Shown: positions 60,825 to 64,000 of the stretch, one piece after another
Layout: each line of letters begins with the position of its first letter
How positions within the stretch are numbered: position 1 is the first letter of the stretch
Assembly: GCA_977020255.1 (NCBI GenBank)
Contig: CDROCS010000122.1
Coordinates: 310,001 to 374,000, forward strand
Length of the DNA stretch: 64,000 nucleotides
From: Obrimoposthia wandeli
Lineage: Eukaryota
Direction of reading: 5' to 3'
Notes under the pieces: model-generated
Told to the model about the DNA's origin: nothing
What the model saw: only the letters and a program-made list of their open reading frames with translations
Database searches by the model: none
Program-made: the position numbers and the translations under genes

Positions 60825-61007
60825 ATATCTACAATTCAAGCTTATACCATTCTGGATAAGTAAATGGTCAGATAATTGCGCAGGAAAAATTGATAATAAC
60901 AAGGCAGAAATTGAAGTAACTAGTTATTCTAATTATAAAATTTCTAACGTAGTTATAAGCAATTTAAACCAGCAAGAATGATCAGATACTTGTCTAGATT
61001 GGTATTA

Positions 61008-61841
61008 CTACTGAATTAATGCTAAACATTGAGGCGGGGTTATTTTTACCGGTTTCTTTTTCTTTGTTTCTTTTTTCTTGTTCTGCGCGGTTTGTTTTAC
61101 TTTCTTTTGTGGTTTCCAAGAGGCCAGTTCAGCCCCGCACCCATCCCCTGGAGGTGGTGGGTTTTGTGCCTTACAGCTAGTGCTGCCATCAGGGCAACTT
61201 AAACGCACATGAAAATGATAATAATGCCCCCACCAAGGGCGCACTTTTCTTAACCAATCACGGTTTTGCCATTCAGATTTACACAGTTGTTCTTTGATCA
61301 CCGGATGCACAAAAATACGCGCGACACGATCATCAGTTGCCGCTAATTGAATTAATAAAGCCTGCTTGTTACTCCAATTTTCATTATTAATTTTATAATT
61401 CTTAATATGCACCATCGGAAGGGGCTGCACTTCTACCAAACTTTCTTTTTCCAATGGCTCATCTGTCATCTTTAACCAAATATCAGCATCAAGCCCTGTT
61501 TGATGGCTAGCATGCCCCGATGAAAAGCGTCCACCCCGTGGCATTGATATATCGCCAACTAGCATATTCCCTAGACGTAATTTTTGCGCATCAGACGATA
61601 ATTCTTTTAAGAACTGGATCATCTCACTGTGGCCGTAATAACGACCTCGCTGTGAACGAATAACCTGATACCCTTCCCCTTCTAGCGGTAAAGTTTCACC
61701 GCCAGCAAGGCAACCATTACTGTATGAACCAATAGAGTTTGATACACCATTGCTCGGTACTTTTACTTTTTCCCAAAGTGTAGCAGAAGCAGATAAGCTG
61801 TAACTCATCAGCATGACAGCAAGAAGAAGTATTCTATTCAC
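61008..61841 (-). CDS. mepA: Penicillin-insensitive murein endopeptidase MepA
   Basis: IGSYSNGC, GDISMPRGG, HASHQTGLDADIW, HFHVRL; signal peptide. Confidence 0.92.
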   Translation of the reverse strand: MNRILLLAVMLMSYSLSASATLWEKVKVPSNGVSNSIGSYSNGCLAGGETLPLEGEGYQVIRSQRGRYYGHSEMIQFLKELSSDAQKLRLGNMLVGDISMPRGGRFSSGHASHQTGLDADIWLKMTDEPLEKESLVEVQPLPMVHIKNYKINNENWSNKQALLIQLAATDDRVARIFVHPVIKEQLCKSEWQNRDWLRKVRPWWGHYYHFHVRLSCPDGSTSCKAQNPPPPGDGCGAELASWKPQKKVKQTAQNKKKETKKKKPVKITPPQCLALIQ

Positions 61842-63124: not shown

Positions 63125-63204
63125 CAGACGAAAAAAAGCCCTAATCTTTCCTGCTCCACCTTAAAGAGGGGGCTTCTTCAATAATGGCGACGTTAACGAG
63201 ACTT
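63125..63204 (-). repeat. Degenerate duplicate of the tRNA-Asp 3' end plus terminator
   Basis: GGGCTTCTTCAATAATGGCG at 63170-63189 and 63254-63273; AAAAAAGCCCTAATCTTT at 63132-63149 and 63230-63247. Confidence 0.8.
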
Positions 63205-63229
63205 TCTAATTTTCATTTTCTACAGACGT

Positions 63230-63259
63230 AAAAAAGCCCTAATCTTTAGATTAGGGCTT
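63230..63259 (-). terminator. rRNA operon / tRNA-Asp terminator
   Basis: AAGCCCTAATC-loop-GATTAGGGCTT with a T run on the minus strand. Confidence 0.85.
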
Positions 63260-63268
63260 CTTCAATAA

Positions 63269-63345
63269 TGGCGGAGTGGACGGGACTCGAACCCGCGACC
63301 CCCGGCGTGACAGGCCGGTATTCTAACCAACTGAACTACCACTCC
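63269..63345 (-). tRNA. tRNA-Asp(GTC)
   Basis: GGAGTGG/CCACTCC acceptor stem, CCGGC-CTGTCAC-GCCGG anticodon arm, GGTTCGA T-loop, encoded CCA; 77 nt. Confidence 0.98.
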
Positions 63346-63377: not shown

Positions 63378-63494
63378 ACTTGGCAATGACCTACTCTCAC
63401 ATGGGGAGACCCCACACTACCATCGGCGCAACTATATTTCACTTCTGAGTTCGGCATGGGATCAGGTGGTTCTATAGTGCTATTGTCGCCAAGT
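63378..63494 (-). rRNA. rrf: 5S rRNA, distal divergent copy
   Basis: CCCATGCCGAACTCAGAAGTGAAA and GATGGTAGTGTGGGG cores; helices I and II pair fully. Confidence 0.95.
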
Positions 63495-63545
63495 AAATTC
63501 TTTTACACAGTTCACGTTATTAACAACACAAACTTAAAATTGGGC

Positions 63546-63662
63546 GCCTGGCGATGCCCTACTCTCACATGGGGAGACCCCACACTACCATCGGCGCAAC
63601 TGCGTTTCACTTCTGAGTTCGGCATGGGATCAGGTGGAGCCACAGCGCTATGGTCGCCAGAC
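63546..63662 (-). rRNA. rrf: 5S rRNA, proximal copy
   Basis: GTCTGGCGACCATAGC...CATCGCCAGGC with canonical 5S cores. Confidence 0.97.
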
Positions 63663-63665
63663 AAA

Positions 63666-63821
63666 TTCTTTTCTCTCTCTTCCGTTTGCTAGAAATACAC
63701 GCTAACCGCATTGCCTGCCTCTCTCATTCAGTTATGTACTTCGTACACGCCTTCACTCGAATCGTTGGCGGCTTTGCTAGCCTGTTTTCTATCTGCACTA
63801 CCCGTGCACAACAGAAAAGAA
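63666..63821. repeat. ERIC/IRU-like imperfect palindrome in the 23S-5S spacer
   Basis: Nested inverted arms TTCTTTTCT/AGAAAAGAA and TAGAAA..GCC/GGC..TTTCTA, apex TGTAC-TTC-GTACA. Confidence 0.55.
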
Positions 63822-63903
63822 ATAATCTGGGAAAGTTAACTAGTATCTCAATACACTTCATTCAAGTGTTCGTGGAGTCCGTAAAAAACCCCTTGGGTGT
63901 TGT

Positions 63904-64000
63904 ATGGTTAAGCCTCACGGGCAATTAGTACAGGTTAGCTCAATGCCTCGCAGCACTTACACACCCTGCCTATCAACGTCGTAGTCTTCAACAACCCTTT
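63904..64000 (-). rRNA. rrl: 23S rRNA 3' end (partial)
   Basis: GGTTAAGCCTCACGGGCAATTAGTACAGGTTAGCTCAA is the reverse complement of the conserved 23S 3' terminus. Confidence 0.97.

What the first reader, a model, noticed from the sequence alone, without database searches (positions are those of the whole stretch)
63378..63662. Tandem 5S genes, one a structurally compensated, AU-shifted variant (16/117 differences)
By manual alignment, 12 of the 16 differences fall in helices I and II and every one keeps pairing. Helix I: G-C>A-U, U.G>C-G, C-G>U-A, G-C>G.U. Helix II: G.U>A-U, G-C>A-U, U.G>U-A, G-C>A-U. That is a net loss of four G-C pairs. The other four differences are in or next to loops A/B, and the long central cores are identical. 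Both genes keep the same AAAAGAATTT 5' processing context (63495-63504, 63663-63672). This pattern indicates selection rather than decay: a functional alternative 5S that has escaped concerted evolution. Inference: a less stable 5S isoform could yield heterogeneous ribosomes, for example for cold or pressure conditions.
Basis: partly seen in the sequence, partly recalled or inferred. Interest (0 to 1): 0.7.

Follow-up and report, generated by a model that had tools for sequence, protein, structure and literature searches.

The report
Conserved second 5S rRNA gene class
A Photobacterium profundum-group bacterium, assembled inside a large host genome, ends this ribosomal RNA operon with two 5S genes; the second is a conserved, structure-preserving minority 5S type found in several related species, most likely an ordinary working spare, not a proven cold or pressure isoform.

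Summary
On the minus strand the window holds the 23S 3' end, a 5S gene (63546-63661), a second 5S gene (63378-63493), tRNA-Asp and a terminator. The two 5S genes differ at 15 of 116 sites, or 16 of 117 with the extra 5' base. Every change in helices I and II keeps pairing.

The variant is neither unique nor an artefact.
- The contig belongs to a Photobacterium of the P. profundum group, inside a 1.35 Gb mixed assembly.
- A complete related genome has 15 major 5S genes and three copies 100% identical to this variant. Each copy lies 52 nt downstream of a major 5S.
- This assembly also has three variant copies. One of them is the only 5S gene of its operon.

Photobacterium has three 5S classes, defined by place in the operon tail:
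- A: the proximal, major gene.
- B: the distal gene, followed by tRNA-Asp. This is the variant.
- C: the distal gene, preceded by tRNA-Thr, as in E. coli rrnD.

Copies cluster by class across species and show compensatory changes, so selection on structure is supported.

The cold or pressure isoform idea is not supported. The variant's predicted stability matches the major 5S of many other Photobacterium species; P. profundum's own major 5S is the GC-rich outlier. Expression, processing and ribosome incorporation remain unshown. Interest is modest.

The parts
63904..64000 (-). 3' end of the 23S rRNA gene (runs off the window end)
   Evidence: Rfam RF02541, 72.5 bits, model positions 2828-2925
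63662..63903 (-). 23S-5S spacer. It ends in the AAAAGAAUUU motif (63663-63672) just upstream of the proximal 5S.
   Evidence: Sequence read. The motif is identical upstream of E. coli rrfF.
63546..63661 (-). Proximal 5S rRNA gene, class A (the genome's major type)
   Evidence: Rfam RF00001, 99.4 bits. The identical sequence occurs 11 times on five contigs of this assembly and 15 times in the complete relative G039.
63494..63545 (-). 52-nt spacer between the two 5S genes, with the AAAAGAAUUU motif at 63495-63504. No minus-strand promoter-like site was found.
63378..63493 (-). Distal 5S rRNA gene, class B (the AU-shifted variant)
   Evidence: Rfam RF00001, 101.6 bits, full length. Pair table. 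100% identical to three copies in G039. Orthologues in P. profundum, P. makurazakiensis and P. minamisatsumaniensis.
63269..63345 (-). tRNA-Asp (GTC), which follows class B 5S genes in every genome examined
   Evidence: ARAGORN; Rfam tRNA, 70.4 bits
63223..63264 (-). Intrinsic terminator of the operon: a 16-bp hairpin followed by a U run
   Evidence: RNA fold -21.5 kcal/mol, z-score -4.7, 0 of 200 shuffles fold as well

Best explanation
The stretch is the tail of an rrn operon of a Photobacterium profundum-group bacterium: 23S, major 5S (class A), a second 5S (class B), tRNA-Asp, terminator.

Class B is an old, vertically inherited second 5S lineage. It sits in a fixed position, distal and just before tRNA-Asp, in a subset of operons. 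It accounts for 3 of 19 5S genes both here and in the complete relative.

Most likely mechanism (inferred):
- It is co-transcribed with the operon.
- RNase E cuts it out at the same AAAAGAAUUU-type leader as the major copy.
- It folds into a normal 5S with an unchanged helix III to helix V core.
- It serves as an interchangeable minority 5S in 50S subunits.

Its helices I and II have diverged by compensated changes. Those helices tolerate change, and gene conversion from the major copies rarely replaces them; a conversion of one strand only would break pairing and be selected against.

Shown here: gene identity, architecture, conservation, compensation and copy numbers. Inferred: transcription, processing, incorporation and functional equivalence.
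For: - Two full-length 5S genes, tRNA-Asp and the 23S end lie on one strand. There is no promoter-like site between them on that strand, and a strong terminator hairpin follows the tRNA.
- All helix changes keep pairing; the chance of this is 0.005.
- The same layout, 23S then 5S then variant 5S then tRNA-Asp, is found in P. profundum ATCC BAA-1252, P. makurazakiensis and P. minamisatsumaniensis.
- The complete genome G039 has 15 class A genes and 3 identical class B genes, each 52 nt behind a class A gene.
- The window flank is syntenic with G039:C1 next to one of these loci at 93-96% identity. The operon tail itself is 98.8% identical.
- Across 32 distinct Photobacterium 5S sequences, helix II is 100% paired, with double changes at 4 of 7 pairs. 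Helix I has double changes at 5 of 9 pairs. None of 500 shuffles reaches the observed covariation.
- Within class B there are two double compensations and no broken pair.
- Tree: class C forms a clade (97/99), class B forms one group (74/73), and the AU form has 87/99 support.
- Class B is the only 5S gene of one operon on contig C2834, and it follows a 3'-damaged class A copy on C1209.
- The leader motif is identical in both copies and in E. coli rrfF. RNase E is known to cut 9S RNA twice to give the 5S precursor (PMC6202311).
- A 189-nt contig of a sediment metatranscriptome spans the terminator, tRNA-Asp and the 3' 35 nt of the variant with one mismatch.
Against: - There is no direct evidence of a mature class B RNA or of its presence in ribosomes.
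- The only RNA-library evidence is one assembled contig covering the 3' quarter of the gene. It could derive from DNA or from a precursor.
- Class B support on a 116-nt tree is moderate (74/73).
- Loop A, loop B and helix II differ from the major copy, and these lie in the region that protein L18 binds in E. coli (established knowledge, not tested here). Strict equivalence is therefore assumed.
- Persistence of a distinct class across several species could also mean a distinct role.
Confidence: 0.65

Rival explanations
1. Class B would be a deliberately less stable 5S, assembled into a subpopulation of ribosomes tuned for cold or high hydrostatic pressure.
For: - The AU form of class B (helix II pair 21-58 A-U) was found only in P. 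profundum-group genomes, P. makurazakiensis and P. minamisatsumaniensis.
- It is 4-5 kcal/mol less stable than the major 5S of the same genome.
- P. profundum SS9 is known for 16S and 23S variation among its 15 operons, which has been proposed to matter under pressure (PMC4019646).
Against: - Its predicted stability equals that of the major 5S of many other Photobacterium species (-11.4 vs -10.8 kcal/mol; helix II -5.9 vs -5.3), so it is not unusually weak for the genus.
- It shares a transcript with a major 5S, so there is no obvious way to express it separately.
- A GC-richer class B form exists in four other species.
- No expression or ribosome data are available.
Confidence: 0.1
2. Class B would be a structured spacer and not a ribosomal component. 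The fold would be kept because it guides RNase E or RNase P processing, or protects the downstream tRNA-Asp, and the excised RNA would be degraded.
For: - Class B is always tied to tRNA-Asp and class C to tRNA-Thr.
- Selection on helices alone would fit a processing scaffold.
- One 50S subunit needs only one 5S, so the second copy in a transcript is in excess.
Against: - The whole helix III to helix V core and loops C to E, 77 nt in all, is identical to the working 5S. That is more than a scaffold needs.
- Loop D letters track the genome in all classes.
- In one operon class B is the sole 5S gene.
Confidence: 0.12
3. The variant would be a decaying duplicate or an assembly or strain-mixing artefact of the metagenome-like host assembly.
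For: - The assembly mixes a 1.35 Gb host with several bacteria.
- One proximal copy on C1209 and the class C copy in G039 are damaged, so decay does occur in these tails.
Against: - The Rfam score is higher than that of the major copy.
- No pair is broken.
- The gene is identical in an independent complete genome and conserved in three named species.
- There are compensatory changes within the class.
Confidence: 0.02

Closest known systems
E. coli rrnD operon tail (rrfD, tRNA-Thr thrV, rrfF)
   Same: There is a second 5S gene in the tail of an rrn operon, with the same AAAAGAAUUU leader. The Photobacterium class C genes (5S, tRNA-Thr GGT, 5S) have exactly this layout.
   Different: Class B has no tRNA between the two 5S genes and is followed by tRNA-Asp. 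It differs from the proximal copy at 13% of sites.
Divergent 5S paralogues within one genome that keep the secondary structure (Pei et al. 2012, FEMS Microbiol Lett 335:11; cited in PMC7812874; text not held here, content recalled from memory)
   Same: The copies in one genome differ by more than 10%, with nearly all changes structure-preserving. Extra 5S genes explain most cases of unequal rRNA gene counts (PMC2686494).
   Different: Here the divergent copies form position-defined classes (before tRNA-Asp, after tRNA-Thr) that are conserved across species of a genus. I did not find this described for Photobacterium in the papers searched.
Intragenomic rRNA heterogeneity of P. profundum SS9 (15 rrn operons, variable 16S and 23S loops)
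   Same: It is the same organism group, and the same idea that rRNA variants might matter at depth (PMC4019646, PMC2672173, PMC2686494).
   Different: The published variation concerns 16S and 23S. 5S classes are not mentioned in the papers read.
Bacterial 5S genes with expansion segments that coexist with normal copies (PMC7812874)
   Same: Two 5S types persist in one genome, which raises the question of heterogeneous ribosomes.
   Different: Those variants carry insertions. Class B has the normal length and differs only by substitutions.

Membership tests
Bacterial 5S rRNA (Rfam RF00001) | Full-length match above the curated score | tested here: met
   101.6 bits against a gathering score of 38, model positions 1-120, not truncated
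Bacterial 5S rRNA (Rfam RF00001) | Three-way junction with helices I to V formed by standard pairs | tested here: met
   All 29 pairs that are standard in the major copy are also standard in the variant, and one more pair is gained
Bacterial 5S rRNA (Rfam RF00001) | Conserved core (helix III, loop C, helix IV/V, loops D and E) that carries the protein and 23S contacts | tested here: met
   Positions 25-57 and 61-104 are identical to the major 5S
Bacterial 5S rRNA (Rfam RF00001) | Gene lies downstream of 23S in an rrn operon | tested here: met
   23S end, 5S, 5S, tRNA-Asp and terminator lie on one strand
Bacterial 5S rRNA (Rfam RF00001) | Mature RNA is present in 50S subunits | not testable with these tools
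   Only assembled contigs of RNA libraries were on hand. One contig covers the 3' 35 nt.
rrnD-type distal 5S (E. coli rrfF layout) | tRNA-Thr between the proximal and distal 5S | tested here: not met
   A 52-nt spacer without a tRNA lies between the copies, and tRNA-Asp follows. The layout is met by class C elsewhere on the contig.
Specialised-ribosome rRNA variant | Variant allele conserved across related genomes | tested here: met
Specialised-ribosome rRNA variant | Condition-dependent expression or incorporation, and a phenotype | not testable with these tools
   No raw RNA reads of the organism were available. The variant shares a transcript with a major 5S.
Specialised-ribosome rRNA variant | Physical property outside the range of ordinary copies (here, lower stability) | tested here: not met
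   Consensus-structure energy of -11.4 kcal/mol lies within the range of the major 5S of other Photobacterium species, -10.8 to -17.7

The most novel reading that the evidence does not exclude
The P. profundum clade would have evolved the AU form of class B (pair 21-58 G-C to A-U, and in P. profundum also 7-109 G-C to G.U) as a distinct 5S isoform. Its weaker helices I and II would ease 5S RNP or central-protuberance assembly in the cold and under pressure. Cells would then carry two functionally different 50S populations.
Probability: 0.1. Interest if true: 0.6.

Novelty: new member of a known kind. Interest (0 to 1): 0.3.

Why it matters
It turns a single-locus curiosity into a tidy comparative picture. 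Photobacterium keeps three 5S gene classes, defined by their place in the operon tail. The two distal classes persist across species while the major class is homogenised within each genome.

This is a clean natural case for asking two questions: how far gene conversion reaches inside a 120-nt gene, and whether minority 5S species enter ribosomes. P. profundum SS9 is genetically tractable, so the questions can be tested.

As it stands this is an ordinary extra 5S gene. An identical copy is already present in a public complete genome, and nothing shows a special function.

Tried and rejected
- Assembly artefact or pseudogene: rejected, because identical or near-identical tandems occur in independent genomes.
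- An unusually unstable isoform: rejected as stated, because the stability is typical of the genus.
- Transfer from another species' major 5S: not supported. Class B forms its own group on the tree. The one class-B-like helix II outside the genus set (G160) is a single ordinary 5S and not a tandem.
- Presence of class B in two further P. profundum-like drafts (G015, G022): could not be decided. Their contigs end just after tRNA-Asp, right before where the variant would lie.
- RNA evidence: the first call to the run finder failed. The second gave only Logan contigs. Laying four runs gave one partial RNA-library contig. Run X15, which covers the 5' half and the spacer, looks like a DNA assembly. 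X5 and X7 are other species with 5S joined directly to tRNA-Asp.
- Pei et al. 2012 (PMC3439594) is not held, so I could not check whether SS9 is listed there.
- The strain behind the record title 'ATCC BAA-1252' is unclear. One paper equates it with SS9, but that genome (G003) is a different species-level representative from G039, whose 4,085,304-bp chromosome and 15 operons fit SS9.

Full report
**What is in the window**

Rfam finds four RNA genes on the minus strand at the window's end:
- the last 97 nt of 23S rRNA (63904-64000);
- a 5S gene at 63546-63661 (99.4 bits);
- a second 5S gene at 63378-63493 (101.6 bits; gathering score 38);
- tRNA-Asp GTC at 63269-63345.

A 16-bp hairpin followed by a U run comes right after the tRNA (63223-63264). 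It folds at -21.5 kcal/mol with a z-score of -4.7. The consensus scan finds no promoter-like site on this strand between the genes. The stretch is therefore the tail of one rrn operon.

**Check of the observation**

The two 5S genes differ at 15 of 116 aligned sites.

Mapped on the Rfam consensus structure, the changes are as follows:
- Helix I: 0-116 G-C>A-U, 1-115 U.G>C-G, 2-114 C-G>U-A, 7-109 G-C>G.U.
- Helix II: 19-60 G-C>A-U, 20-59 U.G>U-A, 21-58 G-C>A-U, with G16>A opposite U63/U64.
- Pair 67-105 goes from a G/G mismatch to G.U.
- The rest are C10>A in loop A and C23U24>AA in loop B.
- Positions 25-57 and 61-104 are identical.

No pair is broken. In 200,000 simulations of 15 random substitutions with the observed ratio of transitions to transversions, all pairs survived in 0.5%. 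With transitions only, placed at helix I/II paired sites, the figure is 2.9%.

The AAAAGAATTT motif lies directly upstream of both genes.

**Whose DNA this is**

The window is part of contig C122 (771 kb) of a 1.35 Gb, 6912-contig assembly. That assembly holds 5S genes of several different gammaproteobacteria, so it is a host assembly with bacterial contigs.

An exact-pattern scan for the variant's helix II found three named genomes: Photobacterium profundum ATCC BAA-1252, P. makurazakiensis and P. minamisatsumaniensis.

The 5 kb beside the operon tail matches a complete two-chromosome Photobacterium genome, G039, at 93-96% identity. The match lies directly next to one of that genome's variant loci. 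The operon tail itself matches at 98.8%. G039 has a 4,085,304-bp first chromosome and 15 major 5S genes, 14 on one replicon and 1 on the other. This fits what is published for P. profundum SS9, which has 15 rrn operons (PMC2686494, PMC4019646). The window's bacterium is thus a member of the P. profundum group, near the species boundary with that strain.

**Catalogue of 5S genes**

In G039 there are:
- 15 identical major 5S genes;
- three genes 100% identical to the window's variant, each 52 nt downstream of a major copy;
- one truncated copy of a third type.

In the present assembly:
- The major type occurs 11 times unchanged, plus four near-variants, on contigs C122, C1209, C2834, C3739 and C6357.
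- The variant occurs three times: in the window, and on C1209 and C2834 with C instead of A at position 10.
- The third type occurs once, on C122.

The variant is therefore a minority type (3 of 19) and not the genome's majority 5S, and the tandem is not an assembly artefact.

Two further details come:
- On C2834 the variant is the only 5S gene of its operon. The order there is the 23S end, a spacer of about 175 nt, the AAAAGAATTT motif, then the variant.
- On C1209 the variant follows a major-type copy whose 3' end is damaged.

**Three classes across the genus**

Sequences taken from 20 Photobacterium genomes fall into three classes.
- Class A is the proximal, major gene. Its helices I and II are species-specific.
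- Class B is distal and is always followed by tRNA-Asp GTC. It has two forms:
  - an AU form, with 21-58 as A-U, in the window, G039, and the three named species;
  - a GC-richer form, with 21-58 as G-C, in four other species.
- Class C is distal and always preceded by tRNA-Thr GGT. This is the layout of the E. coli rrnD tail: rrf, tRNA-Thr, rrf.

In a sample of 401 genomes of the family, the class B pattern was found in 9 and the class C pattern in 24. All but one hit for each pattern lie in this genus. The single class-B-like hit outside the genus set (G160) is a lone ordinary 5S.

**Evidence for selection on structure**

- On 32 distinct sequences, helix II is paired in 100% of cells, with double-sided changes at 4 of 7 pairs.
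- Helix I has double-sided changes at 5 of 9 pairs.
- None of 500 column shuffles reaches the observed covariation, and sliding the partners by 1-3 columns removes the signal.
- Within class B alone there are two double compensations and no broken pair: 21-58, and 6-110 C-G>U-A in P. minamisatsumaniensis.
- A maximum-likelihood tree puts class C in one clade (97/99). Class B forms one group (74/73, in 78% of bootstrap trees), and its AU form has 87/99 support. Labels cluster by class and not by genome.

These lineages are therefore older than the species splits and are kept foldable.

Loop D positions 85-86 behave differently. They read the same in all classes of a given genome: TT in P. makurazakiensis and P. 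minamisatsumaniensis, CT in G045, and TC elsewhere. Either gene conversion homogenises the core but not helices I and II, or all classes co-adapt to the same partner. I cannot tell which.

**The stability argument**

With nearest-neighbour energies on the consensus structure, in the 117-nt frame that includes the extra 0-116 pair:
- the variant scores -12.5 kcal/mol against -17.8 for the neighbouring major copy;
- helix I scores -12.2 against -15.7;
- helix II scores -5.9 against -9.1.

The comparison across the genus changes the reading. In the 116-nt frame (so the figures differ from the 117-nt values above), the variant scores -11.4 and the major 5S of many other Photobacterium species scores -10.8, with helix II at -5.3. 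The P. profundum-group major 5S, at -15.3, is at the GC-rich end. The variant is not unusually weak. It looks like a normal Photobacterium 5S next to an unusually GC-rich one.

**Processing and expression**

The ten bases upstream of both genes are identical to those upstream of E. coli rrfF. RNase E is known to cut the 9S precursor twice to release pre-5S (PMC6202311). The exact cut within this motif is from my memory of the E. coli literature and was not checked. This supports processing of both copies but does not prove it.

Public runs gave only assembled contigs. In a marine-sediment metatranscriptome, one 189-nt contig spans the terminator, tRNA-Asp, the spacer and the 3' 35 nt of the variant, including its class-specific letters, with one mismatch. 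This is weak evidence. It could come from a precursor or from DNA, and it says nothing about abundance or ribosomes.

**Comparison with what is known**

- Extra 5S genes are the main reason for unequal rRNA gene counts in bacterial genomes (PMC2686494).
- E. coli rrnD has two 5S genes (PMC11883441).
- Divergent 5S paralogues that keep their structure were surveyed by Pei et al. 2012. The paper is cited in PMC7812874 but is not held here.
- P. profundum SS9 is known for variation among its 16S and 23S genes (PMC4019646, PMC2672173).
- I found no paper describing 5S classes in Photobacterium.

The gene itself sits unchanged in a public complete genome. I therefore rate this a new member of a known kind. 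The only addition is the position-defined, cross-species class structure.

**Verdict**

- Selection on structure, and long persistence outside full homogenisation, are supported.
- The cold or pressure isoform idea is not supported by the stability comparison and is untested by any expression data.
- Best reading (0.65): a co-transcribed, normally processed, interchangeable minority 5S.
- Rivals: a specialised isoform (0.1), a processing scaffold for tRNA-Asp (0.12), decay or artefact (0.02).

Noticed in passing
G000 contigs C506, C1089, C3914, C4641, C1760 and others: The 1.35 Gb assembly carries 5S genes of at least five other gammaproteobacterial types besides the Photobacterium. One is a 3.78 Mb contig (C506) with 11 5S genes. 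The 'genome' is a host plus several bacteria.
   Followed up: partly
G000:C122:763932-764047 (L031:1501-1616, minus strand): This is a third 5S class (C) with its own compensated helix I and II. It lies distal to a major 5S and is separated from it by tRNA-Thr GGT, as in E. coli rrnD. The class is conserved in at least 24 of 401 family genomes sampled. The copy in G039 (C1:366785) is truncated.
   Followed up: partly
G000:C2834:22375-22490 (L010) and G000:C1209:5151-5264 (L009, L046): One operon has the class B variant as its only 5S gene. Another has a proximal major-type copy with a damaged 3' end (114 nt), followed by class B.
   Followed up: partly
window 60841-61010: A repeat of about 165 nt occurs in dozens of copies (75-99% identity) on both chromosomes of related Photobacterium genomes. 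It is probably a small intergenic mobile or REP-like element.
   Followed up: no
window 63126-63208: A degenerate copy of the tRNA-Asp 3' end plus terminator module lies downstream of the real terminator. The same module is repeated twice more in G039, and G022 has further copies. This suggests decayed tRNA repeats in the operon tail.
   Followed up: no
Alignment A2, columns 85-86 (loop D): These letters follow the genome, not the 5S class. The cause is either gene conversion limited to the core or co-adaptation of all classes to one partner.
   Followed up: partly
G000:C3739:145057-145172 (L027): This is a further major-type 5S with several changes, including helix I position 4 and loop positions. 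It has weaker predicted helix I pairing (-6.8 kcal/mol).
   Followed up: no
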